DNA from: Pecten maximus
Lineage: Eukaryota
NCBI RefSeq assembly: GCF_902652985.1
Contig: NC_047022.1
Coordinates: 18,724,001 to 18,788,000, forward strand
DNA length: 64,000 nucleotides
Direction: 5' to 3'
Each line of letters begins with the position of its first letter. Within the stretch, counting starts at the first letter, position 1. The notes beneath the pieces were generated by a model. It was not told the origin of the DNA. It was given only the letters and a program-made list of their open reading frames with translations, and did no database searches. The translations under genes and the position numbers were made by a program. Positions 40,101 through 62,302 of this stretch are shown here, one piece after another.

Positions 40101-42431
40101 GGGGTATAAAAAAATTACAATAAAATAAAAAGTATTTCCGCCCTACCTACCCCTTTTTTTTGGGCGGAAACACAGCTTTTTTTCTTTTTAGCCTAACTAT
40201 CAATTAGATTACAAGATTATTCAATGAATTTCACATTTAAACCAATCAAATACTTACCTATACTAGTATCTCCGAATACACCAGACATAGCACAGTCTGG
40301 AGAACAAGGACATTTAGTTCTTCCTTTCATCTTTTTCCCAATGGCATGCTTGTCAATGACGTATCTTGATGATGGTGCCAATTTTCCAATCAAGTGATTT
40401 GCCAGCACAATGGAAAGATCTGCCTTATCATATTGTTCCAAATTCAGCAGAGCAGCTTGTGTTTCTGAAAATATGAAAGGTGTAAAAACACTAAGCTCTC
40501 AATCAATACACACAATAATTATATATAACTACTGAATTTATGTATCAATTTCAAATTAGAGTGAGTATGACATTGCCAGGAAATAATAAACGGATTATCT
40601 CAAAAGTTGACACAAGAGATTTCTACACCACAAAAACTTCAAAACATAATTTTTACTCAAGTTTCAATGAAACTTGCAACTTTAATTCTTGCAATGATAG
40701 ATTATGATAAATTGAACATTACAGAGCCTTACCATGGAAATAAAATGTTACAAGACATTATTGTGGTTTTTCTATTAATTGTGTCGTTTTCCTGTTGTAA
40801 CACAGCACAACATGCCTTCTGACTACAAATAATAAGTATCACTGCTCACGATAACTCTTACAAGCTGTACTCAAATGTACACTTGTACAATTTTTTTTTT
40901 AGGTCTGACATTAGATTGGAAACCTTTTTCCATGGGAAATAGCATTATATTAGTGTTTCATATCCTATTGAATTCTAATTCATTTCTAACATATTCTTGT
41001 TTACATGATAAAATTTTATTCATTTAACAACAAACATGAAAAAATCACTAAACATTTCACATTTGCTAGCCCAGATAACGGTCTCGGTTTTTGGGATTCT
41101 GAGTAACATACATATAAAATAATGTATGACATCAGTAAACAACCAAAACACTTTAAATTAAGTATTCATATTATACGTTCTCAAATCTTATATAATTATA
41201 AAAAATCAGGATAATCGATGTATATATATGTATTCTCAGAATCCAAAAACCGAGCTCCTGTGGCCCACTTTTTCTAGACAGAAGCCTGCGAGGCACTGAT
41301 CGGAAACAGAAGCATAAATGTAGGCCTAATTGTGCATTCTAAAATTGGATGTGAAATGAAATTAGACAGAATATATTTAACCGATTTTAATGGCATAATG
41401 AATGGTAAGTTCATTTTTGCAATGATTAATTTTGGTTTGAACAGTTCATATTTTTGTGAGATTTTTTAGAATCTTAAATTCCTCTTTTTTGTAAGTGGTA
41501 AAAAAACAAGAAATTATTTAAAGAAAAATAACAAGACGATATACATGTGGCATGTTTCAATTTTAAATAGTGTACATAGTCATAGTGATATGGTCGCCTT
41601 CTAGCTTCGCGCTAGAGGGAATTTTCCTTTAGCTCAGTCGGTAGAGCAGCGGACCAGTAAGCCGAGGATGGCTGGTTCGATCGAGTGAAGGCGCACACTA
41701 TACTCTTTCCTAGTGTGGCAGGTATTAATTGTAAAGTGTACATAGTGATATGGTCGCCTTCTACCTTCGCGCTAGAGGGCATTAGCCATTTCCCTTTAGA
41801 TCAGTCAGACCAGTAAGCCGAGGGTCGCTGTTACGATCCCCGGTGGAGGCCCACTACTCTCTTTCCTCAAATTCCTGTTAGATACAAAATGCAAATGCAC
41901 TCCTAGTCCTAGCAGCGATAACGTAGCTCTGTACGACGGACGGACAATTTCTGACAGATGGTCGTCGTCGTAACGACATTACCGGAGAGCAATGTAGGCA
42001 GGGTATGAATATTCGTTGTATCCTACATATGTAGTCCTACATGTACAAGTGTACTTACCTTCGTCAACAAGGTAGTGCAACAATTTACTGAGGAGGAATC
42101 TTTCAGGAATGCTTTCAGGAAGTTCCCCTTCTTCCAAAAACTTTGACATCATGCTAAGACCAGTCACGAAAACAGACCCAAACATTTTCTTTTTTACCGG
42201 TTTCACACAACAGTATGCATCAGAAAATGAAACGCCGCCATTCGCATCAGCTGCGTTGCAGTTAAAAAATCGAAGTGAATTCAAATCAGGACCCCGATAA
42301 ATATCACACAGATCATGTAAATGTAATGCAATCTGCTTCTTTATGTTTCCCGGGAAGTCTCTAAATATCGGGTCAAGATTATCTGTACAATGTTTCTTGG
42401 CTGGTACAGTAGCATCTTGGTAGGCCGACAT
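34152..42431 (-). CDS. Uncharacterised ~403-aa protein with a probable restriction-endonuclease (PD-(D/E)XK)-like C-terminal domain
   Basis: Exons 42431-42059, 40464-40258, 34783-34152, joined by phase-1 introns with gtaagt donors, open throughout (alternative ATG 42536). Contains KCPCSPDC...FGDTSIG|NEEVWHGQLNII...QLIAQTVVFSFLQ...LLPCFGVAGTGIVIYFYDSEHDVLL. The gene model is well supported; the fold call is inference. Confidence 0.85.
34851..35150 (+). mobile_element. tRNA-derived CORE-type SINE
   Basis: A-box gatagctcagtcagttagagc, B-box ggttcgaagc, CORE-like ttgggcaagatacttta, (caaa)n tail. Confidence 0.8.
35401..37120 (-). mobile_element. 5'-truncated L1/Tx1-clade LINE with poly(A) tail and target-site duplication
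   Basis: ORF 36797-36144 encodes zf-RVT-like FHYKLVHRILYTN...CTFC...ETILHLFWEC; T12 tract at 35401; GGTAATAGAC(TT) at both 35391 and 37121. Confidence 0.9.
37571..38800 (+). repeat. ~348-bp tandem duplication followed by an 18-bp minisatellite (gatgacagacaacagayg)
   Basis: 37571-37918 recurs from 37919; the array at ~38120-38780 ends at gatggcatagaagctcac, a HINE-like 3' end. Confidence 0.85.
39130..39377 (+). repeat. ~21-22-bp minisatellite (catcaaaatactgataaatata)
   Basis: About 11 imperfect copies. Confidence 0.85.
39590..40112 (+). mobile_element. HINE/Helentron-type element with ~160-bp internal repeats, nested in a small TIR element (~39539-40196)
   Basis: Three tgcatagccggacaa units, (ggac)n, and the 3' hairpin tatacccccc...gaggggtata followed by an A-run; flanks ttaggcctaagaaatagc and gctttttttcttttta-gcctaa. 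Confidence 0.7.
41082..41255. mobile_element. Small MITE
   Basis: ctcggtttttgggattctgag ... ctcagaatccaaaaaccgag inverted repeat. Confidence 0.6.
41570..41870 (+). mobile_element. Two tandem tRNA-derived SINE heads
   Basis: catagtgatatggtcgccttcta... occurs twice; tagctcagtcggtagagc A-box and ggttcgatc B-box; no intact cloverleaf. Confidence 0.65.
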
Positions 42432-42473
42432 GTTTATCTTCACAGTGGCGCATGCGTTATCACCGGAAATGGG

Positions 42474-42492
42474 GAAATCGAAAGTGAAAGTA
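42474..42492. promoter_or_regulatory. IRF-binding/ISRE-like element, next to ETS-like (ccggaaat 42463) and NRF1-like (gcgcatgcg 42448) sites
   Basis: GAAATCGAAAGTGAAAGTA, three GAAA cores at 6-bp spacing, 43-61 bp upstream of ATG 42431 of the minus-strand gene. Confidence 0.7.
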
Positions 42493-42667
42493 GATCGGGA
42501 TAACAAGCATATGGGATCAGAAGCACATGGCACCATTGCAGACGGAATAAGTGTTTGACTCTTTCATTGACATAAAAACATACAACACTCAATATCAACT
42601 CAATATAAGGTAAACGGGATAAGAGAAAATAATCACTCAACCCAAGGGAATGAGATAGGGGGAGGTA

Positions 42668-45551
42668 CAGTTGGGAGCAAACTAAACTTGGTACCAAGTG
42701 CACTTCGTAGTGCACACGTAGTGAACAACGTAGTGCACTAGACTAAACATCGTAGTGCACTTGAGTTCACTACCATGTTAACTCCAGTGCACTACAATGT
42801 TAACTCCAGTGCACTACGATGTTAACTCCAGTGCACTACAATGTTAACCCAAGTGCACTATGATGTGCACTTCAGTTCTTGGGTAAATGTTGCTATGAGC
42901 TATATGATTTGATGTGTTGTATACAATTGTATTATGTGTGCAAGTCAAGTTTTGAAGGTATAGCTACCCATGTTCGTGTATGTAGCACAATTAAACCTTC
43001 GGACTCCGTACTAATTTAGACTTGCTGACAGAGAGATTTCTTATTTAGACTTAAATATAATATATTTTGTCAAAATGTCAGTCTTAACGTATAATGGCCA
43101 GAGGAATTCAATCCATGCCAGATGCAGGAAATGTGTGTTTTTAATAATATTTAAGTTCCATCTTCAGACATTCTAGTGGTTTGATTTTATATTTATTTCA
43201 TGTTTGTAAATGATGTATTAAGGAAACCTGACTACAGGTACATTCATCTTGTCAATTATTAACTTACATATTATGAGAGGATACCTATAGATAGGTAAGG
43301 TTTCGGTATAATGCCTGCTATAAATGGACCCCCTTGGAGTTAATTGGGGAAACCGGCCTGATCAGGTGTGACCCACACCACACAAGGTAATTAATATGTA
43401 ACAAGTATGAATGACAGTGGTCTAGGGGCCCCAAGGGCACTGGACAGGTATCAGTCTCTTGCAGTTAAGATTTTATTAGGATTTAGTGGCACTATATAAT
43501 TCATTGTGTGTGAAAATATGTAGCTTCCCCTCAACTTATGTTAGTTATTTGTTTTATATTGAATAAGCAAACAAATTTATATATTTTCCTGAAAGCTTCA
43601 CATACAATGTTATAATTATAGCTACTGTATATTCATGATATATAGATGATTAATTGATTAGGGAGTATACCTATAATTATGTATACATATTAAGTAATCT
43701 CCATTGAAAGCCATTAATTACTTGTTTGCTATTAGATAAACAAACAAATTAATTTATTTTCCTGAAAGCTTCACATACAATGTTATAATTATAGTTATAT
43801 TCATGAAATATAAATTATTAATTAATTAAGGAGTACCTAATCAAATATATATAAGTAATCACCATTGAAAGCCATGTTTGTTATAAAATGAGAAATCATT
43901 TTAGATTTCATCCATATACTAATTAGCAATACTGCATTTTGATTGTCATTTAAATAATGAAACTGAAAATTCAGTGAAAACAAAAACAATTTTGTTCACT
44001 GCAGATACAAAATATGAAACAATTGACCAAGCACTGTTTACAATTGTATACTGTTCACAGAACTGTATTAAGTTGAGTTGCGTTACATAATTATGAAAAC
44101 AGTTCAAACTGATCAACAAGTTAATCTCCCTATGGCTTCTCGGTTGTACCTTGTTGTGCCCATCTCCCCGACCAAAAAAAAAGTCAAAGTGAATATTCCT
44201 ACTTTAAATGTAAGTATTAATAAATTTGCATTCTTATTGATCAATATACGACACCCAGCCGATAGGTCCTTGGAATAAATTGAACTTGAACTTGTTTACC
44301 GGGTAAGACATTCTGAACTGCGATACAGGTAAAGTATTTTCTGGGTCAGGTGAGACTACAGGTGTGAGAGTAGAACAATAGGGGATAATTACAGGTAAGG
44401 TCTAACCAACAGATCAATGTTCACACCTTGGTCTTGTATGGTCATACCTGAGTGACCACCAGGTAAATTCCATGTAAAAGTGGTCAGTCAAATGCAACAT
44501 TTTGTAATCGGTGGCCTTGTAATCAATCATTTCAGCAAAATAATAATGATAAGTAATTAACCTCCTTATAGACATTGGAAAAACATTTCATTTTTTTATA
44601 ATCTTTTAAATATAATAATGTTATAAGTAATGAAAAAAGTAATCAAATTATAAACATATTTGTTTTACCTATTATTTTTAAGATCTAGTCGATGCAGACA
44701 TTTGGTCTAGCATGACTGTAACTATATTTTTTGTCACTTGGATTTGACCCATACTCTAATACACACAGCTTGGTGACACTTATCAAAACGACAGGTAAAC
44801 TCGCAAGTTTTTGTTTGGATTTTAAAAACCTTTATAATATTATCTCGAAAGTCTTATTATAAAATTATATAAACTTGCAAACCAGTATTTTTATTTCTCA
44901 ATAATAATCAATAATCTTAACGGGGAAACTAATTTATACACTAATTAGGTACATACGATAAAAATTAGATAGGGGACTGATTATATATAATTACATGAGT
45001 GTTTAGGGGAGGTGTAAGCCATGCCTGACTAGTACAGTACCTGTACAGGTAAACCCTTAATTAAGCTTAATGCATGGATGTAATGGGTAGAATTAATGGT
45101 GGAATTAATGTAATATGATACCTGTATTTTGTCAGTTTTTGTGTATATTCTATTAACCAATACGTGACATGCATTATACTTATATACATGTAATAAACAT
45201 ATCTGAAATAAAAGTAAAATGTACACACCATCATGAACACACACAATATACATGGACTAGTCCCTGTATATATATTTATTAAATTTTGTTTAAATGAAAC
45301 ATTTATATGTTCAAGAGATTATGCATTGTATATCAAGTAGTTTGTATATATTGACTCTAGTGCACTACGATGTGAACTCAAGTGCACTACGATGTTCACT
45401 CCAGTGCACTACGATGTTAACTCCAGTGCACTACGATGTGAACTCAAGTGCACTATGATGTTAACTCAGGTGCACTACGATGTTAACTGGAGTTAACTTT
45501 TCTAGTGCACTGAAGTGCACTAGACTACCAAGTTTAGTTTGCTCCCAACTG
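42668..45551. mobile_element. 2.9-kb non-autonomous TIR DNA transposon with TA target duplication (Tc1/mariner-like ends)
   Basis: TA|CAGTTGGGAGCAAACTAAACTTGGTA ... TACCAAGTTTAGTTTGCTCCCAACTG|TA (26-bp perfect TIR); 22-bp subterminal repeats gtgcactacgatgttaactcca at both ends; no transposase ORF seen. Confidence 0.9.
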
Positions 45552-46051
45552 TACAAAAAAGTGTAATAAGATTCCTACTTGGCAAGCCTTGTGTTTGACA
45601 ACTTAAGAATCTTCTCCCTCGAGATCCCCCTGTTCACTCCCAATGGGATGAAAGCTTGTACTAGTGACACGGGAACACAGATAAATCGTTATATGAACCT
45701 TGCCTTTCAGTATATACAGTATATACAATGCATACACACGAATTGTCAATTATTGCAACCAACCTAACAAATACAGTATGTAAGTCTCTGTACATTTACG
45801 GATACTAGTATCACATTCGACATAAACTAATTTAATTTATAATGCAAACCTTTCCTGAAGGGAGTATGCTTATCTGCCAGTCTACATTCTTCCGCCAGAA
45901 TAAGAAAGTCCTAAAATATACCACTCTGTATTAATAAACGACTGTTAATTTTCCAATCTACAAAAATAGCCAACATCTTTTATTTGATATTAAGCTCAAA
46001 TCCTGCCATAACCATTAGCATGGAGGCATGGCTCGAGTAATTGACACACCT

Positions 46052-46118
46052 ATTATAATTTGGTGGGGAGTTTATGTGCCATAGGCTATGGCACATAAAC
46101 TCCCCACCAAATTATAAT
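46052..46118. repeat. Perfect 33-bp-arm palindrome with 1-nt spacer
   Basis: attataatttggtggggagtttatgtgccatag-g-ctatggcacataaactccccaccaaattataat. Confidence 0.95.
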
Positions 46119-46999
46119 GACAGAAAAAGAAAAGAAAAAAAAGATGATGAAGAAGAAGGAGCAAGGTGTCTTCATTGCACTAAAACCAGACCACACATTA
46201 GCGAAGAGATGAAGGAAATATGATCACCATACGACAAATGAGAAATTATGTGGGCCAAGATTGGCATCATTGAGAATAAAGTCATTTGCTCCTGCACAAT
46301 CCCCAAACTAACTTCAAATAAAATAAGTCAACCATATGGCTGTAAACAACAACCCCGCCTGACTATCGATAGAGATTGAAACTTTCCTGGTTGGCACTAA
46401 GAGACCAAATCTCTTAAATAAATGTCTTCGTGAAAGACTGATCACGATATTGGAGACCTTAATTCTTAAGTCTTTGACTGTTCAGCAGCAATCATCGTTT
46501 ATCATACAGTGAGACTAAAACCGAATGATACTCAAAACAGCAGTATCTATGTACATTCGTCCTTTTAAAACATGTCAGTGACACTAAGGGCCTAAAGTGT
46601 TGATACCTAGAAGGCAAACGAAGAAACTACACAAAAAAAAAAAAAAAAAAGATGGCGAGGTGCAAGCCACATAATTCAATACATTTAATAATTTTCAATA
46701 AAATCTTAAAAGAACTTCATGCTTACGCTCTGAACCATGCTTATTTGTTAGAGTTTAACAGCCCATCGACATGCTAGAGTCATTTATGGCCAAACAAATG
46801 GTATTATTATATTTTATTTGAGTTTAAAGTCAGAAAAAAAATATTCATTTTTAAAAGCATTCGTATTGTATATTCAGATCATTAAGATAAAAAAAGTGGG
46901 TTAGAATAGTAAAAAAAAAAAAAAACCCAAAAACTCAACCAAATAGATTATGTGAACTTTGTAATATCTAAACAACGTCAAAGAGAGTAAGGTAAAAGG

Positions 47000-47745
47000 A
47001 CACCAAAGTATATAGAATAGATCGATGTCTTTAAAATAGCTAAATAGAGTTTTTGAATCCACGGAAATGAAAAGAGTTATCACGAATGTGATTTAAATCG
47101 GAACATTCTATTGTAAAATGCTCCATTGTGGTTGAGTGTCACATCATTAACATATTGGTGGATCTTCTCGGTTTGAAAGGAACGTATGAGTAGGATATGT
47201 ATCCCTCTCTGCGTCTTTCCGACTAGGAATTGATGTTTTAAGTTTCGGTTGCACTTTCAAATGATTGCCTTTTTAATGCTGTGTTCATCGATATGCTCGA
47301 GGGCCAAACAGAGTCCTTTTCTTCAACATCTTTTAAGCCATCAGTGTAGGTTATGATCAGAAAAAAACTGCAATCTACTCCAGAAAGGAGGATTTGTGTT
47401 CTTCGGGTAAACCACTCGTTAATATCGGGTGTTTCAACAAGCCACGGTGGCACATTAGATACGGTGTACTCGGCTATATTGTCTAAACTTATGTTAAGTT
47501 CCTGTAGAAAGTTTGAGATTTTTCTGCCAATATTTGTAAGAGTGTTTGGTGTTGAGTGAATATGTTTTGGTATTGCGGAATGATAACCAGATTGAAAGCC
47601 GGGATTTTTGGTTTTGACTTCAATTGAGCAGCGTACTGTAGAGCTAGTTTTTCCTTCGGTCATTTAATGATGACTCATTTGCCTCTACATAAAGGCTCTG
47701 CACTGGTGTTGTTCGAAAAGCACCAAATGCTAGGCGTACAAATGT
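47000..47745 (-). mobile_element. Degenerate RNase H-containing LINE fragment (I/Nimb group)
   Basis: RLAFGAFRTTPVQSLYVEANE, VPPWL and YTDG motifs spread across broken frames. Confidence 0.7.
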
Positions 47746-48044
47746 AGTCCTTGGTTTTGGATAAGACCAAACATCTGCATGTAGGAATTGCGTGTCGATT
47801 CCATACATAGCGCACCGTGCAACTATTCCAGTCAATGAAATAGTGTTATGTTCTCTCTCATTACATTCATCCGAACATAAAATAATTAAATTCAAATGAA
47901 TAACAAACCATAATGGGATTACAGCTCGTTGCTCATTTATTCACATAAAACAACAATGCCAACACCCTCTTACACAGAACAAACACAATCTTATAACCCT
48001 GCTAACCAGATTCCCCTGTGTTTCTTTGCCAGTCCTCCCGACGG

Positions 48045-48975
48045 CGATTAAAAGGCTATATTGTTGCTTCGTTGATTTTAAACGTGCTTTTGACTACATA
48101 GATATATATAAGTTATGGTGTAAGTTATCTCAACTTGTTTTCAGAAGAAAATTACTTAAAACAATAAAATCAATGTACATGTATAGTCAGGTGAAATCAT
48201 GTGTCACCTTAATGGGAGATGTACTGATGTTTTTGTTAATAACATGGGCCTAGCCCAAGGCGAAATTATGTCGCCAATTATGTTTTCCTTATGCGTAAAG
48301 GATTTTGAAAATTATTTTATCGAATCTGAAGCGAAAGATTACCAGTTTGGAGAGTTAAGACTTTTTCTAATGATGTATGCTGATGATTTGGTCTAGCTTG
48401 CTGAATCTGCGAGTGACTTATATGTTGGATAAACTTGGAAACTATTCCCAAACATGGAGCATAACTGTAAATGTAGAAAAAACAAAAGAGTTGTTTTTAG
48501 AAAAAGTGGCAAATTACATAAAGATGATAAGTGGTTTTATAATGGTGAGCAGCTCCAAGTCGTAAACCAGTTTACATATTTGGGAGTTGTTTTCAGATTC
48601 CACAGTAAGTTTAATCCACTACAAAAACAGCTATCTGATCAAGGGTGAATAGCTGTATTTGCACTGTTTTCAAAATGTAATTCTATGCAATTGAACTATG
48701 TTACACCTGTTTGATCCATATTTGAAATGTATTCTATGCTATGCATCTGAAGTATGGGATGCCTGCAATGCTAATGCCATTGAACAGATACAACTTGAAT
48801 TTTGTAAAAGGATATTACATGTTAAAAAATCAACATGCACTATTTATTTTGAACTGGGTAGATTTCCAATTGTATATACCCAGCAATATAATTTGATTAA
48901 GTATTGGGTTAAGCTATCAAACACCAAGAACTGTATTCTCAAAGCTGCATACGAGGAACTAATGCGTGCTGTTCT
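48045..48975 (+). mobile_element. Frameshifted LINE reverse transcriptase fragment (RTE-X/CR1-like)
   Basis: CFVDFKRAFD, GLAQGEIMSP, MYADD, VNVEKTK, FTYLGV and YFELGRFP in successive frames. Confidence 0.85.
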
Positions 48976-50597
48976 TATCACTCGATTTCTTAGCTGGGCA
49001 GCTATAACTTACAATAAACCTTACTAGTGGAATGTACGAGAGGCATTGTAAGGGTGAAGATATAGTACCTTAATATACAATATACACATTGTATGAATAC
49101 TAGGAAACAAAATTGCAAAATATATGTGAATAAGTCTGAATATAGAATATTAATTAACATAATTGCATAATATCTGTTTTGTCAATCTATGACTCATTAG
49201 CGATGCTAGGGATGGATACTATATATTGGTTTAGTAGGTTTTAAAGACCTTTAGTACACTCCTCGGTTGTCACCACCCTAGTTCACATTTGGAGGATGTG
49301 GCTTAATTCGGATCTGACCTAAGTTTGCATGACGGATGTCCTTCTTGAAATCCTGGTTTCAATGTTTGATTGATTTTGAGTTATAATTATGGTTTCGTTG
49401 GTATCTCATGTTTTATTCTTAAAACTTTTTCATTCCTCCGGCATTAACACATTCTTTACTAGTTATTTCACCAATATATATAGATAACAACTCCATCACT
49501 AACAATGCCTTGTAGCGTTGACTATAAACAGGAATCACTCTAGGGTAAGGCTTAAGGATCTTCACCCATGTTTTGTGCTGGATATATCATTCATTGAAAT
49601 TCTCATAATGTGCTTTACTATAAAAGAAAATCCCATTCACTTTCTTCAACAAATACCAACAGATGCTTTTAGATTCAATATACTCCATCAAGGTTCAGTG
49701 ATATTTTACAATTTACCTCAATATCTGCGGTTGAACTATGTTACCTAAAAACAGGCTTCTTGCTATGTTCTCACAGGGTCTAATAAGAGCAATTTTGATG
49801 ATTGAAATGCCTCCCTATATGCCATATTTGTTTGATATTATTCACAAACGTCATTTGCATTTATGCTTTCATAAAGTCAAAGCCGGTCAAAAAATGTTCC
49901 CACTACCTGCTGTATACACTTGTGAGCTTTACGACATGGCTATTTTGTGCAATATACGTGATCCACATTAACATAATCCTGTAGTTTACACATGTTTTGC
50001 CGAAATTTACAGGCAGCTTAACAAATGACATGTCAACAGCAAGACTCATGGTTAGTCATAATACAATAGACTCAGTTACGTCTGTTTAATTGGACCAGAA
50101 TAGTGATTTATAGGCTTGTGAAATATCACTGGATTTTCTATTTACACGAACCTTAAATTTGAAACCTTAATTTTGTGTGTATAAATATATTTATATGAGA
50201 AATTGTGCCTGAGATTTGTACAAATGTGAACAAGTAAACTAATAGGTGGTAGCAATCATATACTTGCTGGTAGTTAAAACATCGCAACTTGTTTGGTCTC
50301 ATATAGTATATATATGTTATACGCTTATTAGAATATGATACCATCTCGAAAAATATGAAAGGAATATAGAATTCTCTGACATTCATTTTTTATCTGATAA
50401 ACCGCAATCATCGAGTAGTATTAGCCTCTTCGTTTTACAATCTTTTGAACTGGGGAAAGTGAATTTGCGACGCTCAATATGATACATGTATACATTTATT
50501 GTATGTGTTTATTTGTTTGTACGTTGTAATATGTAAAGTATTTCCAATTTTGAACCATAGTAATAGATACACTGCTAATTTTACATAACTATTCTCC

Positions 50598-50622
50598 GAA
50601 AATGAAATCGAAAGTGAAAGTA
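50598..50622. promoter_or_regulatory. IRF-binding/ISRE-like element upstream of the DED gene
   Basis: GAAAATGAAATCGAAAGTGAAAGTA, four GAAA cores at 6-bp spacing, ~420 bp upstream of a consensus AAG|GTGAGT donor (51044) that probably ends a non-coding first exon. Confidence 0.65.
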
Positions 50623-52659
50623 AACATCTATCTCTATCAACCAAAATTAGATAGCTCTACCACAACTCTACTATTCCTCATTTCAGGACAAGGCGTGCAA
50701 TGTGATCTTGAGTAGATTTAGATGTCGACTCGTTTTTCAAAAAAAATAAAAATCAGACTAAGGAAAACACAATGTATACGTACTTCCTGCAGATACATGT
50801 ATATGAGCATGCGTACAACAAACATTCCACATTCCAAGGCGCGATATTAATTCCGGTTATAAATTGAAGCGATTGCAAATACCAATTTATGATATATATA
50901 CATATATATATATAAGTACGGTTATATATATATGTATATATATCCTAAATTTGTCTTTGGAATGAATTTTATTTGGGGGGAAAGAAAATTATATTCAAGA
51001 CGTCAAGCTTAGCGAAGTGTTTTAAACGTATCTGGATAACAAGGTGAGTAAACTGAACATGCTGGCGTGATCAGTAACGTAGTTCAGTATTAAGTATTTA
51101 TTTTTTCTCTATGAAACGTGAATATACGTAAAAGGAATATAAGCAGAAGAGAACCATGTTAACATGTTTTGAATTTACGTATTGTATTAAGATATCTTCT
51201 ATAAAAAATACCATTGAACCACGACGGCCTCGCCAGTGTTACACAATCACTGTGTGAATCATGGTAGAAAATATCTCAAAACAAAGGGTTTTTGTTTGGT
51301 TGAAATATCAACATGGTTCTACCGCCCTATTTGAATATATGTATTGTTACCAGCGAAGTTTAAAGAATTAAGAAATATTCAGTGAAAATACAAAACAAAA
51401 GCTATTTTCAGATTAAAAAAAATAACACTTTAACAGCCAAACATAAAATCAACACGGAATAGAAATGACTGTATGCAATTGACCAATCAGAAACGTGGAT
51501 ACAAAAGCAAACTGATCTTATCTGTAGTGAGAATTTTTAAACACACTCGTGACATATAGATGTTTATAAAGAACACGACCCTTTGGGGCAGAGGGTTAGT
51601 GGGTTAGTACAATCCAGCTCAAGGAATTGTCTGTTAATTTGGATGAATTAATCAACATATTTGCTATTTTACTACTCGTATAGCCTTAGGATAATATTCA
51701 AGATTTTGCTATAAAACATTGAATGCATACATGTGGTAACGAAGTAAAGGTCAATACAGAAATCGTATTAAAATACATGTGTCATCAAGATTCTTTATCC
51801 CATAAAGACGCGATTTTTGTGCAAATGCACGTAACTTCACTTGCATTCAATTTAGATATGATTTAGAGTGAATATTGCTATGATAATGCCAATCTATCAT
51901 GAGAGAAAAATGTCGATTTCTTTAACCCCATCATTTAATTTTTTTTATACAATACATGTATAAACTGTCAGTTATATATCCAGAATACCATACCCTAACC
52001 ATATTTCTACTGTGTGATTGTAGTCCTCAAAATATGTATCTGAAATGCTTAACATGTCGAAAAGACGTAGGAAGAGTGCCAATTTGGGCTATTCCGTGGT
52101 CCCTCATGCAGTCATCATCATCATCTCTTTTATTCCTCAAATTAAAGATATATATAAAAGATTACAATAATATCTGAAAAAAATAATAGTGTTTGGCATT
52201 TTCTGCTTAAGAAATTGATTTATCAAGTATTTTAAAAGTTCAGTTGACAAAATGTCAAAAACTGAAAAGGGAGTCACCGTGACCTAGTTTTAGGTATCTT
52301 TTGATATCAAATGTTTTAGAAAAAATGACCGGAAATTTGCATTTTGAAAATAACTTTGTGTGTACAACAGGGGAATATTGAAACCCTGATCCTTCTTTAG
52401 CAGAAATTGTTTAAAATATCCTCTATACTTTAACATTGAATGTGTATGATTTTTAACAATAGCATTTTCAAATTTAATACCTCCCCCACAATGTTAACAT
52501 ACCATGTGTAGCTGACCTTTAAATATCATTGAGTGGCACCCCTTTTTATAATCCTAAATCTTATTTTTTTGCATGATTAAGATAAACAAGCCCGCTGAAC
52601 CGAAATATAGTCACCATAAATATCAACTCGTTGAACTTATATTTTGAGACTCTATTATT

Positions 52660-52952
52660 ACTTCAATGTCTCCGCTAAGGATTGAACCCAGGACCCCTGA
52701 CATACTTGTCTTATACATAACCGATCGAGCTAAAGAGAAGTTGTCCCTAGTCGAGCAGTATAATGCGGCTACTATTTACCAGGGTTAAACTATCAAAAAT
52801 AGAGATAAAATATTCAATTTTGATATTATAAACATTTTATTTATCTACTCTAACTAGCCCTCCAACTCTGGGTTGCAAGTTCGTAACCTACGTGGGACAG
52901 TTGCCAGGTACTGACCGTAGGCCGGTGGTTTTTCTCCGGATACTTCGGCTTT
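52660..52952. mobile_element. SINE fragments (minus-strand tRNA head 52660-52790; plus-strand V-domain-like piece 52860-52952)
   Basis: gattgaaccc...accgatcgagcta (reverse B and A boxes); ggtttttctccggatacttcggcttt. Confidence 0.55.
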
Positions 52953-54418: not shown

Positions 54419-54676
54419 AGTCAAAATCTGATATTTTTATTAGTTCATCAACCTTATGCCAGTATCTTAACTACCGAAAATGAATGACAAGCATTCCAAA
54501 TTCATTTCTTGTTTAGCCCTATGCAGTTTTTGGGAAGCGTTAACCATATATTCGGAAGCTTGTTGTCTACCGCAGCCAATGCTGCAACGTATTATGTACA
54601 ATACTTCGTGAGATGTATCATTTTAAATGACATATAAAACCCATGTTTAATATATTTTAATCCGTACAGCCTGACG

Positions 54677-57600
54677 ATGCCTAAAGACAAAACACACACG
54701 TCAACAAAAATGAGAGCCGTGCCATATGAAAAAGTGCCCCGTAAGGAATCAACATCAAATGGAGCAAGCTCTTATCAAGCCCGGACAGAAGTGAAGTCGA
54801 TTGAGCAGAACTATCAGCATGTTCAAGGTTTTAATATCACTTTAAAATAGCTCTTAGTCGTATCAATCTTATACTGTATAGTTTTGGTACATTTCATAGG
54901 TATTAAAGTTCAACCATGCCTTGTAATCTTTCTGTTGTAAACACTTCTATACATTTCGTAACTCATATAAACTGTCTCTATGTATTTATTTCCGCGCAAT
55001 ACTAAATGACCGCGAATAAAGTGAAATTATAACCTCCGCGAGTATTATCGATTTTACAGACAGATATTTGCCAGTTAAAAACGTCTCCATCGTTATGAAG
55101 GAAATGCAGTTACGTGACTAATAATCCGGACCAGGAATTCAGGAATGCAAAAAAAAAATTTTTTTTTTTTTTTTTTTTTTGTAAATGTATCCGGCACTGG
55201 AAATAATCAAATTAGCCATTCAAACTCTTTGATTATTTTTTGTATTAAAAAAAATATTATTGTAATATGCTAAAAGAATTTAAATAGACCCTATATATAT
55301 ATTAATGAAAATAAAAGAAACTGAATTAAATTGATAAAAATAAACATTGTACTACATATGTAGAAATGGGGATATTTTTATATATTGTCCATTATTATAA
55401 GCATTTTATTTCATTAAGTGAATAGTGATTTTTCTTTTTTTTTTTCTCTTTCGCTTTCCTCAAGAGGTCTCTTACAGATTTGATTATATTCATAATCTTA
55501 ATTGATGACTGAGGTAATTCCTTTTCATATATGTACTAATACTTGTAGCTGATAGATTACTTATTTATTTGTAACTGAGCAAGATCAGGTTACTTTATCA
55601 CGAGTTAACATATGATGAAGCACTCCATATTTGACTTTACCTTAGTGGGATCATGTTATGAAATGACCACTTTGCTACCAGGTATTTTTTTTTATACTTT
55701 ATGCAAAACATACTGTCTTAAAACACCGTTACATGTTAAATTTAAGATGTTTCCTCTTTCTTCTAGTATGGTGATACTAGGGACCAAAAGTGTGGAAGCC
55801 CAGGGGAAAAATTAGAAAAATGCAAATTGAACCAAAACACGTTTTCAAATATAAAAAGGGAGGCGTTGTACCTTATAGTTTAGATTGGGCTAGGATAGAT
55901 TGGTGTGTTCAGAACACGCTTTGTTCAATTGAAAATACGTGATGTGTTTTGCTCAGGGTTAGCTTTGCGTTTGAAATATATCGAATAGTCTCTATAAGCA
56001 ACAAATAGAGTTATTTTTCGACCTGTAGATCTAGTTCAGCTCTGGATGACGAAAGGGGTAAATGTCAAAAATTATTTTGAGTATTTAAGAAAAGTGCTGA
56101 CGATTTCGTTAACTATTATTAGTATCGGCGAGTGTTATTTTGCGATTTTTGTTTCGCCGATGAAAGGTTCTGAAAATAAGACGGTCTCACAAATAAGCCT
56201 TACTCGCCTTACAGGATACATGACTTCGAAAATAAGACGGCCTTGAAAATAGGTCTGCTTCGAAAATAAGCCTTTGATTCTTTACCAATAAAAAGAAAAT
56301 AAGCCGCGGCTTATTATCGAGATTTTAGGGTATATATCCAGATCCAGGATGATGTCTTATTCGTTATTTTCTTTTAAACAATTTCAGAATCCAACATGGA
56401 CGACGACTTAGTCATATCGACCGAGTGGAAATTGAATGTACTATTAGACAAAATTTCTCAGTCCCTTAAGGAGGAGGACTTACCAAGAATGAAATTTTAC
56501 TGCAGAGGTGAGACAAAACAAAAACATGATTAATTTCTATAGATTTACATAGATATATGTGTCAATATATATATCACCAAAACCTGGCACGTCCTTAAAT
56601 GACCCTGGCTATTAATAGGACGTTAAACAAAAACAAACAAACAAACAAAGTATCAAAAGTACAAAAGAAGATAGATCAATTATGTTAATCAATTTAAATT
56701 GTTGTCTATAAATGTTGTGGAACATATTCATTAGATGTATATAAAAGACATTATCGGTTAACTTACGTTTCTTTCATTTTTTTAATCAATAGCACATACA
56801 CTAATATTTGCTCCTTAAGTTCTTTTTCTTAGCAGGAAATGATGAATGACGATGGATTACGTAACGCATGTATACATATAACCATGCTTTCAATTGAAGC
56901 CGGAACTATTGGACGAAAAGCATTGAGCGAAGCAGTGAATCCACTCATGTTCTTCCAGTTGCTGATGGATAACGAGTTTTTAAATTGCAACAATCTTCTA
57001 CACTTGCAAGCAATGATTTGGCATATCGGCAGGAAAGATCTATACAAAGATATGGTAGCATTTGCGAGAGAGTGTCGTCGACAGCCATTGTATTTTTTCA
57101 CACCCAAGATAAAGCCAGGTATTGTATGCAATTTTTAATTTGCGTAGTCGGTCCGGATTTGGTAGTTATATACGACACAAAAAGCGTATCGGCGTCGTTG
57201 TGTACAAATAACTGAAGTTGGCGATAAAGTTCGAATCTTGAGTATTGCTGCAATGTTGAAATAGCAGTGGCGTGAATAAACAACGCCGCGAAAATAACTA
57301 GGTATACAGAATGTTTTTCTGTTTCAATTAATTCTAGTGCACGAAAATAACGTAATCTACAAAAGACGAGGGAGGATATCAAAACACATTGGTGAATGCA
57401 CCTTTAGTTCGCAAGTTTATTAATACAAAATTATGGCACATCTTTCAAAGAATCTCATTAATGTTTCAGTCAATGGGTACAAACACGTGAAATTCCATAT
57501 CGGAGGGTCAGAAACAAACAGGCGAGAAGTAGAAAATCTGAGAGGCGTTGTAGCAGAGCTACTTTGCGTACAACACGAAGATGTGATGCTGGTTGGCTTT

Positions 57601-60600
57601 GAACCTTCAAACAGCATCATCATTACCTTTATGGTACCTGAAGAAGCGATTGAAACGTTGTATGACTTAGAACCAGAAGACAGGAGTGTGCTTAAATCCA
57701 TGAAAGTTGATTACATATTTCAAGATGAACAAGAGATACCCTTAATTGGTACGTATGATTATGATATAATTAATATAAATTTATAACTTTAGCTTCATAA
57801 GAACAATGCAGCAAAGAAAAGAAAAAAAAGAAGGAAAGAATAATTATTGTAACATAGATCAAATTCAAAATGCCAAAAGATATTGAACCCTTGAATAATC
57901 AGAACATACATGTATAGGGTAAACCTGGACAGGTTTTCTTGCAGTTTTGATCAAACTAAACTCTGTATCTTTGTTAAAAGGCAGTGTACTAGACTAAACA
58001 TTGTAGTGCACTACGGTGTTAACTTCAGTGCACCACGGTGTTAACTACAGTGCACTACGATGTTGTTCATTTCAGTACACATTCATGGTGTTATGAGATT
58101 ACTAATCCGAGTGAAGATTTGTATCATACAAGGTTACCCAAATCCATATAAATGTAAGAATAATAAAATGTGACCATTATATGGACAATACACATTATAC
58201 TTTGTGTAAATAAATACAAGCATTTTTTAATTCTGTTTAAAAAGAAGCTGATTTTATACATCTGTACCCATATATATTACACATATATTAATTTCTTTCA
58301 ATTCATCTAATTATTGTGGTTATGGTAAATACTCTTTACATATCTACTGCAGTTATCTGTAATATGAATGTGTCTGCGATGGTATTTTGATAAAATGTTC
58401 TGAATAACAAAGTCTCCTTTAGGAATGTAATGACAGAAGCATTTATAATATGGTTTACAGTCGGCGATCAGTGGCTAGTTGTTCAAAAGGTGATTAGTTT
58501 AAAGATTTTTTTAGTGAAAATGTCATTTCTCCTTTACTTCAAATCATATGTGAGTGTATCATTCAAATCAAAATCAGCATGTAAGAAGAGACTGGTAGGT
58601 GTTATATTTAAAAAAAAGTTTTACCAGAAACCATTTTATCAGGATTTTCAGGATTTTAATATTGTTGGTTAACTATGATTAGCCTAGCTAATCACCATTG
58701 GAACAACTGGGCGCAGACAAAAATACTTAACAATTGATATATTAATAAGTGAATTCGTTTATAGGCCTGGTGTGTATATTTCATTTTATCATTGTAACAT
58801 AAACACAACTCTATATTGAAGTAGAGGACTGAATAGCATAATAATAAGATATATGTCTGCTATTGAAGGCTATATTATTTTATTGACAAATTTCAGCAAC
58901 TGAAATTTTAACTCATCTAATTGGAATATTTTCTACAAATTATACATACGCAGTTACGAAATTACTTCTATCTCAAGCCTATTCAGCAGATGATAGCCAC
59001 GTCATGAAAAGCTTGAATGCAACTAGGGTAGTTCGGGGACGTAATGCTTCCTTGGGTGGTTAACAGTTACGTTTGCACAAGCTGTAATTGTAATGATTTT
59101 TCGGCGATGTTTATAGAATATCTTATTACAATAAAAAACCGCTTCTGATATGAATATTATTTATTTGTAAAGTTAGGACGCAGTTCAAATTTACAAACTT
59201 TAAATATATCAATAGGTAAACATTATGTTTCATATATTAAAATGTGACCATAGGTAAATTCCAATAACTAATTATGGTAAATCAGGAAATGGTTTACTTG
59301 AAATAATTATCATTATCAATATGAATCATAATTGAAAAAAAAAAAACACTTTAAAAGGGTAATGAAGATGTGATATTCATCGGTAAGCGTCAGATATCAT
59401 ACTTTGTAAGCCAGGAAAAAAAGTATTTTCTTCCTAGCAATAAACAATATTTTACACTGTAATTTCATACATCATGCTAGCGCTGAATATATTGGTGAGT
59501 TGACCTCTAACTCCATGTCTCAGAGACCGAACTTTTCCGAATTTCGATAGGCCATGTATATCAACATGGATTATTTTAAGATTTGAAAGTATTTTGACTA
59601 GTTTATACAGTTTATTTAGAGGCCAAAATATGTCATATTCAAATATCAATTTGGTATAAAGGATATCTCATCAATGCCTTGAAAAATTCGGAACTAGTGA
59701 TTGATGACCAAACTGCAATTGTTTTTTAATAATTAGAAGTAATGTATTTTTACAGCATTAGACTCTAACTGGAGTTCATATGTCTTGCGCACTCCAGCCC
59801 ACAAGCTAGTGAACTGGAGTTCATATTTCTTGTACACTATAGTACACTAGACTACAACGTTTAGTTTGCTCCCAACTGTACCTTAACTCGCGTTTTCTTA
59901 AAAAAAATGTCTATTTAAAAAGCTGCTACATATTAGATGTATGCAAAGATCGAAATTCGTATTCGAGAAGACAGAGTTACCCAGTGAATTGCGAAAGACT
60001 GGCAATGCGGAAGTTCTCCGTAAAGAGTCGATACTTTTGGGATTATTTTCACTTTAGCTCTTCACCATGTTAATATATCATGGCAAAATCGAAGGAACAA
60101 TTATAACCAGATATTTAAAATATATATTTACAGGTGAAAAAATGCAAAAGCCTACCACAATATCGCAAATAGAAGCAACATCGAAACTTTTGAGAGATCG
60201 AGATCAGTTGACTTCCAAGTTAGGGAAACTGCAATCTTTACTTCAGAAAAGAAATGAGGAGTTACGTCAGGCAAAAGTGAATGAAAAACTTTTGCAACAG
60301 AGTAGGGACCAAGCTTTCATTGCTTTTATGACTCTCCTGAACAACCATCGACCGACTACGACGGCTATCGATTCTCTTGTTAACAAGAGTGGCATGGTAT
60401 ACTTCCGACATAGCCTTCAAACGTTTAGGTCGAAATTTCCAGACGAAATGGATGCCATTGAAACATTATTAGAAGCAAAGGAGCTACTTGCTTGCAAGGC
60501 TGAAAGAGATGCATGGAGGCAACATACTGAATCTATACGACTTTTGAATCAACTTGAGACAAATTCATTAAGGATTCAACACACAATGGCCATCACCAAG

Positions 60601-62302
60601 CTTCAAGGTATAAGCTACAATCAGAAACCACCAGTACTGTATCCCAATGGACATGTAACCACACAGAACAGAACCATTCAAGTTGATGTAGCAATGGTGA
60701 CAGAACAGGTTCAGACAGGAGACTTACCAAAAGACATGCAAATTGAACCAGCCAAAAAAGTATTTAACTCAAAAGGTAATTTTATTTTTCTGTCTTTACA
60801 ATTTTAACTATCAATGCCATTATAATAACTATTAAAGTATATGGAACTTAACGATGTACATCATAAAAATAAATGCACATACAAGTGAAGCCTTGGATAA
60901 GAAAGGAGATATCGATTCATGATGATAACACGAGAGAGATATCTCATTAACAAAAAACATTCCGTGTACGTTCAGAATGAGGATTTGCCTTGATTTGAGT
61001 ATAACCCGGTTATATCATTTCTGAAATAATTATAGGGAGACCTATGATTACAATAGGGACATTTTGGAACTATTACACAATAAAATAATCAATAAATCGG
61101 TAATTTGATGTGTCCAACTTAAAAACATGTTCGTATTGTGAGGAACCACAACATAAAACATCTCCATTGTTATGTTGTTTATACCTTGCGTCGTAAACTT
61201 TTGACAATGACAGTAAACTGGTTGATATTTGCTCTATAAGTACATTTACAAAACATAATTTTATATACAATAGTTTCATTTCTAACAAATATGTAACAAG
61301 TGATAGTCGAAACAACGAGCATTATACACGTCCAACTTTATATCTTATATATATGTGATTTTTTAATGAATTTTCATTTCATATGAGATTCCATGAAACG
61401 ACGTGTCTTGAAAGTTATTTTTGCGAGTCTTAGCGAGCTGAAATTACAACCTGAGACGAGATTTACTACGCTATTGGCATATATTTACTGTATAATAGGC
61501 CGATTGTGCGCTGAAATGTCTTTTTATTTATTTTAGTCATTAGAGCTTTTGAAGACATATCCAATATGCTGAATCTTGCACAAAAGAAGAGCCTACTCAG
61601 ACAGTCGGGGATAAGCGAGTCGGACGAACATAAATATTTGAAGAACAATGGGCAGTTCATGCAACACTTGTATCGTGCGAAACCAGCCGAACAAGTGATA
61701 GATGAATGTAAGTTAATTATTACTGTTGATTTCTGTATATATCAGTATTCCCTGAGAAAACACTACATTAGTACTTTTGTTTTATATAAATTCGGGTATA
61801 TATCCATTTTATATGAATAAAGAGTCAATAAATTATAATTATCAATCTATTAACAATCGCAAAATATAGTTATTTAAATATTTCTGTAGAAATAATTCGG
61901 GGTAATATTCATATAATCATTAAAGTCGAAAGGAAAAATTTAACTTGTATATCACGATAGGTCTTGTTCGTTTCGGTTCCTTTTCGGTGAGTATCTGTCC
62001 TTCGTCGTACGAAAAGTATTTGAGCCCGAGCATAAATATGTATTCGAGTACGACCCAGCTCTCAATGAGGTTGAAGGATAAATGATAAACATTTTCCTTT
62101 GATGAACAATTCCCTTTTAGTTCAGTTTTTTGTGATTTTCTTTTACTGTAAATGTTTCCATCTTTTGTTTTTCATGACATCAGTGGAATTTGCTCTGAAA
62201 ACGTGTCGTCAATTGGACGATAAGAAGCTAGACGAAGGAGTCTACAAGGTTGTGATGAGTGTTGTCAAATATCGCGACGAGCAATGTGCCATGTTACAGT
62301 GA
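54677..62302 (+). CDS. Death effector domain (DED) protein with TRADD-N-like domain, coiled coil and C-terminal death-fold-like region, ~566 aa
   Basis: Exons 54677-54827, 56388-56507, 56900-57118, 57470-57748, 60134-60775, 61537-61707, 62184-62302, all introns phase 1, total 1701 nt open. DED-like LLDKISQSLKEEDLPRMKFYC...FFQLLMDNEFLNCNNLLHLQAMIWHIGRKDL (RxDL motif). The first coding exon has a weaker donor (gtttta). Confidence 0.85.
57982..59878. mobile_element. Decayed relative of the 42668-45551 TIR element in DED-gene intron 4
   Basis: Subterminal gtgcactacg repeats at 57982-58080 and right TIR gtttagtttgctcccaactg|ta at 59859-59880; left TIR missing. Confidence 0.65.

What the first reader, a model, noticed from the sequence alone, without database searches (positions are those of the whole stretch)
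42448..51050. Identical 19-bp ISRE at the 5' ends of two divergent genes: candidate IRF-controlled nuclease-fold plus death-domain immune module
Seen: GAAATCGAAAGTGAAAGTA occurs at 42474-42492 and 50604-50622 with unrelated flanks, so this is not a duplicated block or a shared TE. One copy is ~50 bp upstream of the REase-like gene (-), beside ETS- and NRF1-like sites. The other precedes the probable first exon of the DED gene (+). The 8 kb between them is mostly TE debris. Established: tandem GAAANN repeats, and GAAAGTGAAAGT in particular, are the IRF1/2 binding consensus, and bivalves have IRFs and an interferon-like antiviral response. Inference: these two uncharacterised genes are co-induced effectors, a nuclease-fold protein and a DED/death-fold adaptor, an arrangement reminiscent of nuclease-plus-cell-death defence systems.
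Basis: partly seen in the sequence, partly recalled or inferred. Interest (0 to 1): 0.85.

Follow-up and report, generated by a model that had tools for sequence, protein, structure and literature searches.

The report
Shared interferon-type promoter motif, two scallop genes
Two neighbouring, back-to-back scallop genes (an uncharacterised mollusc-only protein and a death-effector-domain adaptor) each carry the same 19-base interferon-response-type DNA motif just upstream of their starts, which makes them good but unproven candidates for infection-induced genes; the proposed "nuclease" identity and functional pairing are not supported.

Summary
GAAATCGAAAGTGAAAGTA occurs exactly at 42474-42492 and 50604-50622. 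Both copies lie in single-copy DNA with unrelated flanks. The 918-Mb genome (most likely Pecten maximus) has only five copies.

Copy 1 lies 43-61 bp upstream of the ATG of a minus-strand gene (gene A). Copy 2 lies at least 210 bp upstream of a non-coding first exon. RNA contigs splice that exon to the DED/TRADD-N gene (gene B), so both copies are promoter-proximal.

Indirect support for an IRF/ISRE-type element:
- The closest gene A paralogue has two GAAATCGAAAGTAG boxes in an otherwise unalignable promoter.
- GAAANNGAAAGTAG is about 4-fold over-represented genome-wide.
- Similar boxes precede a TLDc gene pair and, in imperfect form, the viperin gene.
- The genome encodes at least four IRFs.

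No induction or binding data could be obtained.

Gene A shows no restriction-endonuclease signal by sequence, profile or predicted fold. Gene B is a known bivalve type of DED-TRADD-N adaptor. The A-B adjacency is not repeated elsewhere in the genome, so a "nuclease plus death-domain module" is unsupported.

The scan has noted similar ISRE-type promoters on other DNA of this genome (s1-791996, s1-792220).

Verdict: a new member of a known kind, of moderate interest.

The parts
42474..42492 (+). ISRE-type element 1. It has three phased GAAANN units (GAAATC GAAAGT GAAAGT A) and reads in reverse relative to gene A.
   Evidence: It lies in single-copy DNA, 43-61 bp upstream of the gene A ATG.
42448..42470 (.). 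NRF1-like GCGCATGCG (42448-42456) and ETS-like CCGGAAAT (42463-42470), between element 1 and the ATG of gene A.
   Evidence: Read directly from the sequence. These are consensus resemblances only.
42059..42431 (-). Gene A exon 1. ATG at 42431, donor GT at 42058-42057, phase 1.
   Evidence: ORF and donor. The N-terminus aligns with paralogues P0001 and P0005. RNA runs hold part of this exon.
40258..40464 (-). Gene A exon 2 (207 nt, phase 1 to 1). It is inferred by homology and is optional in a paralogue's isoform.
   Evidence: Alignment with P0003, P0004 and P0010. Splice sites. No RNA evidence was obtained.
34152..34783 (-). Gene A last exon. It holds the conserved C-terminal domain of a mollusc-only family. 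The total model is about 403 aa.
   Evidence: There are 16 homologues, all mollusc or unnamed, with no Pfam domain.
42665..45554 (.). Transposon-like element with perfect 29-nt terminal inverted repeats and 22-bp subterminal repeats. It starts 173 bp upstream of element 1.
   Evidence: I8, D1. The terminal sequence is repeated many times in the genome.
47241..49024 (.). Probable retroelement debris in mixed orientation.
   Evidence: ORFs. There is a weak RVT_1 hit for 47900-48250 (E 0.0026, below the Pfam cut-off); the other four ORFs tested had no family hit.
50598..50622 (+). ISRE-type element 2. It has four phased units (GAAAAT GAAATC GAAAGT GAAAGT A). The 19-mer is 50604-50622. It reads forward relative to gene B.
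   Evidence: It lies in single-copy DNA.
50832..51043 (+). Gene B exon 1, non-coding. The 5' limit given is the furthest RNA contig end, so the true start may lie further upstream.
   Evidence: The X1 contig covers 50832-51043, X3 covers 50949-51043 and X2 covers 50979-51043. All are spliced GT..AG to 54670. No contig covers 50550-50749.
54670..54827 (+). Gene B exon 2, with the ATG at 54677.
56388..57118 (+). Gene B exons 3 (56388-56507) and 4 (56900-57118), which together encode the death effector domain.
   Evidence: The DED profile positions 2-31 and 27-81 fall on the two exons. In the full protein P0017 the DED scores 43.9 bits, above the 35.9 cut-off.
57470..57750 (+). Gene B exon 5, a TRADD-N-like domain. 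The 3' end is approximate.
   Evidence: It scores 20.6 bits against a cut-off of 22.5. 104 homologues were found; all seven long ones scanned carry an N-terminal DED, six above the Pfam cut-off.
60115..62302 (+). Gene B exons 6-8 (about 60115-60774, 61536-61721 and 62100-62302). They encode a coiled-coil-rich C-terminal part with no recognised domain.
   Evidence: tblastn of P0017. Pfam gave nothing significant.

Best explanation
The two identical 19-mers are genuine IRF-type (ISRE / IRF-E) promoter elements. Each is a run of three or four phased GAAANN units, the form that IRF DNA-binding domains recognise. One lies in the proximal promoter of each of two divergently transcribed genes.

Gene A encodes a member of a mollusc-only family of unknown fold. 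Gene B encodes a DED-TRADD-N adaptor of the kind that is expanded in bivalves.

The most likely mechanism is that one or more of the scallop's IRFs bind these boxes and raise transcription of both genes after viral nucleic-acid sensing (RLR/cGAS-STING to TBK1 to IRF, as described in oysters).

What is shown: the motif, its uniqueness, its promoter-proximal position, the gene models, and the expression of both genes.

What is inferred: IRF binding, inducibility and co-regulation.

Nothing indicates that the two proteins act together.
For: - The motif is exact and its flanks are unrelated.
- Both copies lie in single-copy DNA.
- There are 5 copies in 918 Mb against 0 for the control. Two of them lie 8.1 kb apart (P about 1.8e-4).
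- Gene B: exon 1 is supported by RNA and spliced to the coding exons. The motif lies at least 210 bp upstream of the furthest contig end, and nothing is transcribed over the motif in 4 runs.
- Gene A: the motif lies 43-61 bp before the ATG. Three upstream ATGs at 42536-42510 argue for a start site close to the motif (inference).
- The closest paralogue, L007 (59% aa identity), has two GAAATCGAAAGTAG boxes at -74 and -141, each followed by a CCAAT box. Its promoter does not otherwise align with that of gene A.
- L009 has GAAACCGAAAGC at -77, and L013 has GAAACTGAAACT at -305.
- 3 of 17 paralogues have a strict box within 400 bp upstream, against a background of 0.038 per kb (P 0.002).
- Genome-wide counts: GAAANNGAAAGTGAAAGT 63 against 15 for the reversed control, and GAAANNGAAAGTAG 1154 against 283, mostly with a C before the second GAAA.
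- The same GAAANCGAAAGTAG boxes occur twice before a putative non-coding exon (consensus GT donor; no RNA evidence) upstream of two TLDc genes.
- A phased GAAACT-AAAACC-GAAAGC-AAAACT run lies about 115-140 bp before the viperin ATG.
- At least four IRF DNA-binding-domain genes are in the genome.
- Oyster IRF2 and IRF8 activate human ISRE and IFN-beta reporters (PMC5557890). The GAAA-contacting residues are conserved in an oyster IRF1-like gene (PMC7819612).
Against: - There is no expression data under immune challenge and no binding data.
- The start site of gene A was not mapped.
- Part of the genome-wide excess of (GAAAGT)n-type strings comes from coding low-complexity exons such as Glu-Ser or Lys-Val runs. 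One of the five exact 19-mers lies inside a cadherin-like exon, so such strings also arise without regulatory function.
- The TLDc genes used as a positive control are stand-alone TLDc proteins, not IFI44.
- The viperin box is imperfect.
- The four paralogues of gene B and 13 of the 16 other gene A paralogues show no comparable box in the sequence available.
- Cross-species conservation could not be tested.
Confidence: 0.55

Rival explanations
1. The boxes are real protein-binding sites but belong to a different or non-inducible regulator. One candidate is a PRDM1/Blimp-1-type repressor, whose consensus AGTGAAAGT is contained in the 19-mer (own knowledge). Another is a constitutive IRF1/2-type factor that sets basal expression. 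In either case the genes would not be infection-induced effectors.
For: The 19-mer contains AGTGAAAGT. Both genes are present in ordinary transcriptome runs that are not known to be immune-challenged. IRF1 is proposed to have constitutive roles in invertebrates (PMC7819612). The genome-wide preferred form GAAANCGAAAGTAG differs from the vertebrate ISRE.
Against: Boxes of the same form precede viperin, a classic antiviral gene, and TLDc genes. Oyster IRFs activate ISRE reporters (PMC5557890). The presence of a PRDM1 homologue was not tested.
Confidence: 0.2
2. The two 19-mers are a coincidence of low-complexity sequence and have no regulatory role. GAAAGT-type hexamer runs arise easily by slippage, and two happen to lie near gene starts.
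For: Hexamer runs of this type also occur in coding exons, and one exact 19-mer is in a cadherin-like exon. Given two strict triple boxes, identity at the variable positions is not very improbable: 7 of 63 have the TC spacer. The chance that two of 63 such sites lie within 8.1 kb is only about 0.035. The first-stage scan looked at very many windows.
Against: Both lie at promoter-proximal positions of expressed genes. The reversed control has 0 copies. The motif recurs in the closest paralogue's promoter, which otherwise does not align. There is a 4-fold genome-wide excess of the extended form, despite a CpG in most variants listed.
Confidence: 0.2
3. The exact 19-bp identity reflects short-patch copying (gene conversion or template switching) between the two nearby promoters, rather than independent selection for the same sequence. 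This says nothing by itself about function.
For: Identity extends over the non-consensus positions (the TC spacer and the final A), and the sites are only 8.1 kb apart on the same strand.
Against: Identity stops abruptly at both ends with no flanking similarity. The same TC-spacer form occurs twice in the promoter of paralogue L007 on another chromosome, which suggests a preferred site sequence instead.
Confidence: 0.05

Closest known systems
Vertebrate ISRE / IRF-E (PRDI-type (AAGTGA)n elements of the IFN-beta and ISG promoters)
   Same: Both consist of tandem phased GAAANN units containing the AANNGAAA IRF core. GAAAGTGAAAGT matches the classical IRF1/2 site. Both are promoter-proximal and occur in either orientation.
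   Different: There is no interferon/ISGF3 system of the vertebrate type in bivalves. The locally preferred form is GAAANCGAAAGTAG, not GGAAANNGAAACT. Binding and inducibility are untested here.
Oyster RLR/cGAS-STING-TBK1-IRF pathway with ISRE-responsive IRF2/IRF8 (PMC5557890, PMC8218723)
   Same: This is a bivalve, the genome holds at least four IRF genes, and the element is of the type that oyster IRFs activate in reporter assays.
   Different: Those studies used human reporter elements. The papers read here name no native bivalve ISRE upstream of genes like these two.
DED-TRADD-N lineage-specific expansions of marine invertebrates (DEDD2/NCOA6 clades; Kaur et al. 2021, PMC8195603)
   Same: [quoted passage not shown] It has local paralogues on the same chromosome.
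   Different: The TRADD-N match is just below Pfam's cut-off. The C-terminal part has no recognisable effector domain. Promoter control of such genes has not been described.
PD-(D/E)xK restriction-endonuclease-like fold
   Same: Only a small alpha-beta-beta-beta-alpha core is predicted. This arrangement is shared by many folds.
   Different: There is no sequence or profile hit, and no structural match above noise (one REase at Z 3.6, rank 27). No lysine is conserved. Gene A itself has N and K at the two positions that are acidic in most of the family.

Membership tests
ISRE / IRF-E cis-regulatory element | Two or more phased GAAANN units containing the AANNGAAA core | tested here: met
   There are three units at 42474-42492 and four at 50598-50622.
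ISRE / IRF-E cis-regulatory element | Position in the proximal promoter of a transcribed gene | tested here: met
   Gene B: the motif lies at least 210 bp upstream of the RNA-supported exon 1. Gene A: the motif lies 43-61 bp upstream of the ATG of an expressed exon, but the start site itself was not mapped.
ISRE / IRF-E cis-regulatory element | The cognate IRF transcription factors are present in the organism | tested here: met
   PF00605 matches above the cut-off at four loci: C11:19.0 Mb, C17:14.19 Mb, C1:31.83 Mb and C1:31.86 Mb.
ISRE / IRF-E cis-regulatory element | Bound by an IRF protein | not testable with these tools
   This needs EMSA, DAP-seq or ChIP.
ISRE / IRF-E cis-regulatory element | Confers induction by virus, dsRNA or an interferon-like signal | not testable with these tools
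ISRE / IRF-E cis-regulatory element | The same element recurs at promoters of recognised antiviral genes of the species | tested here: inconclusive
   Viperin has an imperfect phased run about 115-140 bp before its ATG. Two TLDc genes have two GAAANCGAAAGTAG boxes, but they are stand-alone TLDc proteins, not IFI44.
PD-(D/E)xK restriction-endonuclease-like proteins (gene A) | Sequence or profile similarity to a known REase-fold family | tested here: not met
   There is no significant Pfam, PADLOC or PDB-sequence-profile match. The Atlas gave only a 0.78 lead to HSDR_N, which is in the chance range.
PD-(D/E)xK restriction-endonuclease-like proteins (gene A) | Structural match of the alpha-beta-beta-beta-alpha-beta core to REases | tested here: inconclusive
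   The models are of low confidence (pLDDT 50.5 and 59.7). The best VIA Z scores are 6.2 (SRP14) and 4.9. One REase appears at Z 3.6. Foldseek found nothing at E <= 0.001.
PD-(D/E)xK restriction-endonuclease-like proteins (gene A) | Conserved catalytic D ... (D/E)xK | tested here: not met
   The invariant residues are Q49, V56, F59, P74, Y88, D89, D93, L95, S98, W124, N128, G135, F149 and Y160. No conserved lysine follows an acidic residue. Gene A has N in 'LDII' and K in 'LLES'.
DED-TRADD-N adaptors (gene B) | Death effector domain | tested here: met
   P0017 is 98% identical over the TRADD-N exon and maps exon by exon to the window. It scores 43.9 bits against a cut-off of 35.9. The two exon halves match profile positions 2-31 and 27-81.
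DED-TRADD-N adaptors (gene B) | TRADD-N domain after the DED | tested here: inconclusive
   PF13820 scores 20.6 bits against a cut-off of 22.5. 104 homologues were found, and all seven long ones scanned carry an N-terminal DED (six above the cut-off).
Conserved two-gene defence module (gene A family next to gene B family) | Recurrent adjacency of the two families | tested here: not met
   The 17 gene A-type exon-1 loci lie on 12 contigs. Gene B paralogues lie only at C8:16.01, 16.02, 18.95 and 18.98 Mb. Only this locus, plus a degenerate gene A copy at C8:18800186, combines them.
Classical bidirectional promoter | The start sites of the divergent genes lie less than about 1 kb apart | tested here: not met
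   About 8.4 kb separates the ATG of gene A (42431) from the 5' limit of gene B exon 1 (50832). At least 2.9 kb of this is an inserted transposon.

The most novel reading that the evidence does not exclude
The two genes are an IRF-driven, co-induced pair. In this reading, a mollusc-only protein family of unknown (possibly new) fold acts together with a DED-TRADD-N adaptor in antiviral cell-death signalling. In addition, GAAANCGAAAGTAG would be the scallop's own ISRE variant, so that about 1,100 genomic sites would outline an interferon-independent 'interferome' of a bivalve.
Probability: 0.1. Interest if true: 0.7.

Novelty: new member of a known kind. Interest (0 to 1): 0.4.

Why it matters
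Bivalves mount an interferon-like antiviral response, but few native cis-elements and target genes are defined. If these boxes are functional, they would add two lineage-specific genes to the IRF regulon: a mollusc-only family and a DED-TRADD-N adaptor. The extended motif GAAANCGAAAGTAG could then be used to predict infection-responsive genes across the scallop genome. The result also corrects the record on two points: gene A shows no evidence of being a nuclease, and there is no evidence for a conserved two-gene module.

Tried and rejected
- **Orthologous promoters.** None of the collections offered holds mollusc genomes, so the motif could not be footprinted across species.
- **IFI44 as positive control.** This failed. 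The TLDc array on C1 encodes stand-alone TLDc proteins of about 190 aa.
- **REase hypothesis for gene A.** Pfam, PADLOC, a PDB sequence profile, the Atlas, two AlphaFold models, two VIA-wide searches and one Foldseek search gave nothing above noise. Several weak SH2-domain rows (Z 3.3-4.6) are only a lead.
- **Transposon origin of the motif.** Rejected.
- **Recurrent A-B adjacency.** Rejected.
- **Joined spliced proteins.** Exons were searched one by one, and the database protein P0017 stood in for gene B.
Full report
**Observation.** The 19-mer GAAATCGAAAGTGAAAGTA occurs exactly twice in the window, at 42474-42492 and 50604-50622. Both copies are on the + strand, and there is no further match at up to three mismatches. 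The flanks are unrelated: ungapped identity is at chance, and local alignment scores of the 150-bp flanks equal those of shuffled sequence. A DNA search of the whole assembly found 50380-50830 only once. It found 42432 to about 42662 only once as well, with a dispersed repeat starting at about 42663. The motif is therefore neither a duplicated block nor carried by a transposon.

The assembly has 918,306,378 bases in 3,983 contigs. Protein hits name Pecten maximus. It holds five exact copies of the 19-mer against none for the reversed control, all with different flanks. One of the five lies inside a cadherin-like coding exon, where it reads TFTFDF on the other strand. The chance that two of five random genomic sites fall within 8.13 kb is about 1.8e-4. 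Copy 2 is in fact four phased hexamers (GAAAAT GAAATC GAAAGT GAAAGT, 50598-50622).

**Gene A (minus strand).**
- Exon 1 runs from the ATG at 42431 to 42059, with a consensus donor.
- Exon 2 (40464-40258) is inferred from homologues.
- The last exon is 34783-34152.
- The model is about 403 aa.

Motif 1 therefore lies 43-61 bp upstream of the ATG. Public RNA runs hold part of exon 1, but its 5' end could not be mapped. Three upstream ATGs at 42536-42510 would be included in any transcript that starts further upstream. This suggests, by inference only, a start site close to the motif.

The protein belongs to a family found only in molluscs, with no Pfam domain.

**Is gene A a nuclease?** I found no support.
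- Pfam, PADLOC and a profile search of all PDB sequences gave nothing significant.
- An AlphaFold model of the full-length relative P0004 was poor (pLDDT 50.5). A model of the window's own last exon was slightly better (59.7), with a confident alpha-beta-beta-beta-alpha core.
- Exhaustive structure comparison gave a best Z of 6.2 (SRP14) and 4.9. A single restriction enzyme appeared at Z 3.6 among many unrelated rows. Foldseek found nothing at E <= 0.001.
- The invariant residues of the family (Q, D, D, S, W, N and others) include no (D/E)xK. Gene A itself has N and K where most members have D ('LDII') and E ('LLES').

**Gene B (plus strand).** Contigs of three RNA data sets cover 50832-51043 (X1), 50949-51043 (X3) and 50979-51043 (X2). 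They splice GT..AG to 54670-54827, which contains the ATG at 54677, and then to 56388-56507. No contig covers 50550-50749 in any of the four runs. Motif 2 lies at least 210 bp upstream of the furthest observed 5' end.

A database protein, P0017 (566 aa), is 98% identical over the TRADD-N exon and maps exon by exon to 54677-62299. Its DED passes Pfam's threshold (43.9 bits). The TRADD-N match is just below threshold. DED plus TRADD-N plus a variable tail is the architecture described for lineage-specific expansions in bivalves and other marine invertebrates (PMC8195603).

**Does the motif behave like a regulatory element?**
1. *Paralogues of gene A.* The genome has 17 exon-1 paralogues. The closest, L007 (59% aa identity, on another chromosome), carries two GAAATCGAAAGTAG boxes at -74 and -141 from its ATG. 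Each is followed by a CCAAT box, and the promoter otherwise does not align with that of gene A. L009 has GAAACCGAAAGC at -77, and L013 has GAAACTGAAACT at -305. Three of 17 loci have a strict box (GAAANNGAAA[GC][TC]) in the 400 bp before the match. The pooled background is 0.038 per kb, giving a binomial P of 0.002 with the discovery locus included.
2. *Genome-wide counts.* GAAANNGAAAGTGAAAGT occurs 63 times against 15 for the reversed control. GAAATCGAAAGT occurs 231 times against 104. GAAANNGAAAGTAG occurs 1,154 times against 283. In the places listed, a C before the second GAAA (AC, CC or GC spacers) is the commonest form, so those boxes contain a CpG.
3. *Other genes.* Two genes of a TLDc array on C1 share a promoter with two GAAANCGAAAGTAG boxes. 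These lie just before what looks like a non-coding first exon with a consensus donor (no RNA evidence was obtained for it), and they have the same orientation as in gene A. The viperin gene (C11:2824882) has a phased run GAAACT-AAAACC-GAAAGC-AAAACT about 115-140 bp before its ATG.
4. *Trans factors.* The genome has at least four IRF DNA-binding-domain genes. Oyster IRF2 and IRF8 activate human ISRE and IFN-beta reporters (PMC5557890). The residues that contact GAAA are conserved in an oyster IRF1-like gene (PMC7819612).

**Caveats.**
- Several of the 63 triple-hexamer sites are coding low-complexity exons, such as Glu-Ser or Lys-Val runs. The excess over the control is therefore not all regulatory.
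- The TLDc genes are stand-alone TLDc proteins, not IFI44.
- The viperin run is imperfect.
- Most gene A paralogues, and (as far as the listed sites show) the four gene B paralogues, lack such boxes.
- Nothing here shows binding or induction.
- The sequence AGTGAAAGT would also fit a PRDM1/Blimp-1-type repressor (own knowledge).

**Is it a module?** The two promoters are about 8.4 kb apart. The spacer contains a 2.9-kb element with perfect 29-nt terminal inverted repeats (42665-45554) and a weak, sub-threshold reverse-transcriptase-like fragment, so this is not a classical bidirectional promoter. Gene B paralogues lie only on the same chromosome (16.01, 16.02, 18.95 and 18.98 Mb). Gene A paralogues are scattered over twelve contigs. 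Apart from a degenerate gene A copy at C8:18800186, the two families are not neighbours elsewhere. I see no evidence for a conserved nuclease-plus-death-domain system.

**Comparison and verdict.** The elements work like vertebrate ISRE/IRF-E sites and meet the sequence and position criteria. The functional criteria (binding and inducibility) could not be tested. Gene B is a member of a described bivalve expansion. Gene A is an uncharacterised mollusc-only protein, and the nuclease label should be dropped.

Earlier notes of this scan report similar ISRE-type promoters on other DNA of the same genome. I used them only as leads. One of their claims, that the motifs precede IFI44-like genes, was only partly borne out.

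This is a new member of a known kind: a credible, testable pair of candidate IRF targets. Confidence in the regulatory reading is about 0.55, and interest is moderate.

Noticed in passing
window 52853-52953: A short stretch in intron 1 of gene B attracts hundreds of RNA contigs at very high depth in all four runs. The loose ends resemble a tRNA-derived SINE, so this is probably a highly expressed dispersed repeat.
   Followed up: no
window 54284-54484 versus 60058-60260: A fragment that duplicates the start of gene B exon 6, together with upstream intron sequence (54080-54300 resembles 59843-60070), lies in intron 1. An RNA contig therefore seems to 'go back' when laid on the window.
   Followed up: partly
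window 37700-38950: A long minisatellite in the large intron of gene A gives open frames of up to 272 aa in several phases (SVVCHP... repeats). It is not coding.
   Followed up: no
window 42665-45554: A transposon-like element with perfect 29-nt terminal inverted repeats and arrays of 22-bp subterminal repeats. Its termini are present at many genomic sites.
   Followed up: partly
window 36147-36935 (-): A retrotransposon tail with a zf-RVT domain (33.5 bits) lies inside the large intron of gene A.
   Followed up: partly
window 18865-18876 and 55443-55458: These are the only other strict or triple ISRE-like strings in the 64 kb: GAAAGCGAAACC in an AT-rich stretch, and TTTCTCTTTCGCTTTC in intron 2 of gene B.
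   Followed up: no
G000:C8:18800186-18800497 (about 12 kb beyond the window's end): A degenerate gene A paralogue (30% identity, two stop codons) lies downstream of gene B. The local order is therefore A, B, then a decayed A copy.
   Followed up: no
L003 532-813 (-), near the 19-mer copy at G000:C8:45224802: An ORF carries a 2A-like 'IEPNPGP' peptide motif of the kind seen at the start of some non-LTR retrotransposon ORFs.
   Followed up: no
G000:C1:54321354-54337323, G000:C3:32046816-32067389 and G000:C17:5489687-5496498: These are regularly spaced clusters of ISRE-type boxes: five GAAACCGAAAGTAG within 16 kb, three GAAATCGAAAGT 10.3 kb apart, and three (GAAAGT)3 3.4 kb apart. They probably mark tandem gene arrays with such promoters.
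   Followed up: no
window 34152-34783 (gene A last exon): Weak structural rows to SH2 domains (Spt6, STAP-1, RasGAP, Grb2, Syk and others; Z 3.3-4.6), together with an N-terminal 'VWHG' motif. This is a lead only and is below any meaningful threshold.
   Followed up: partly
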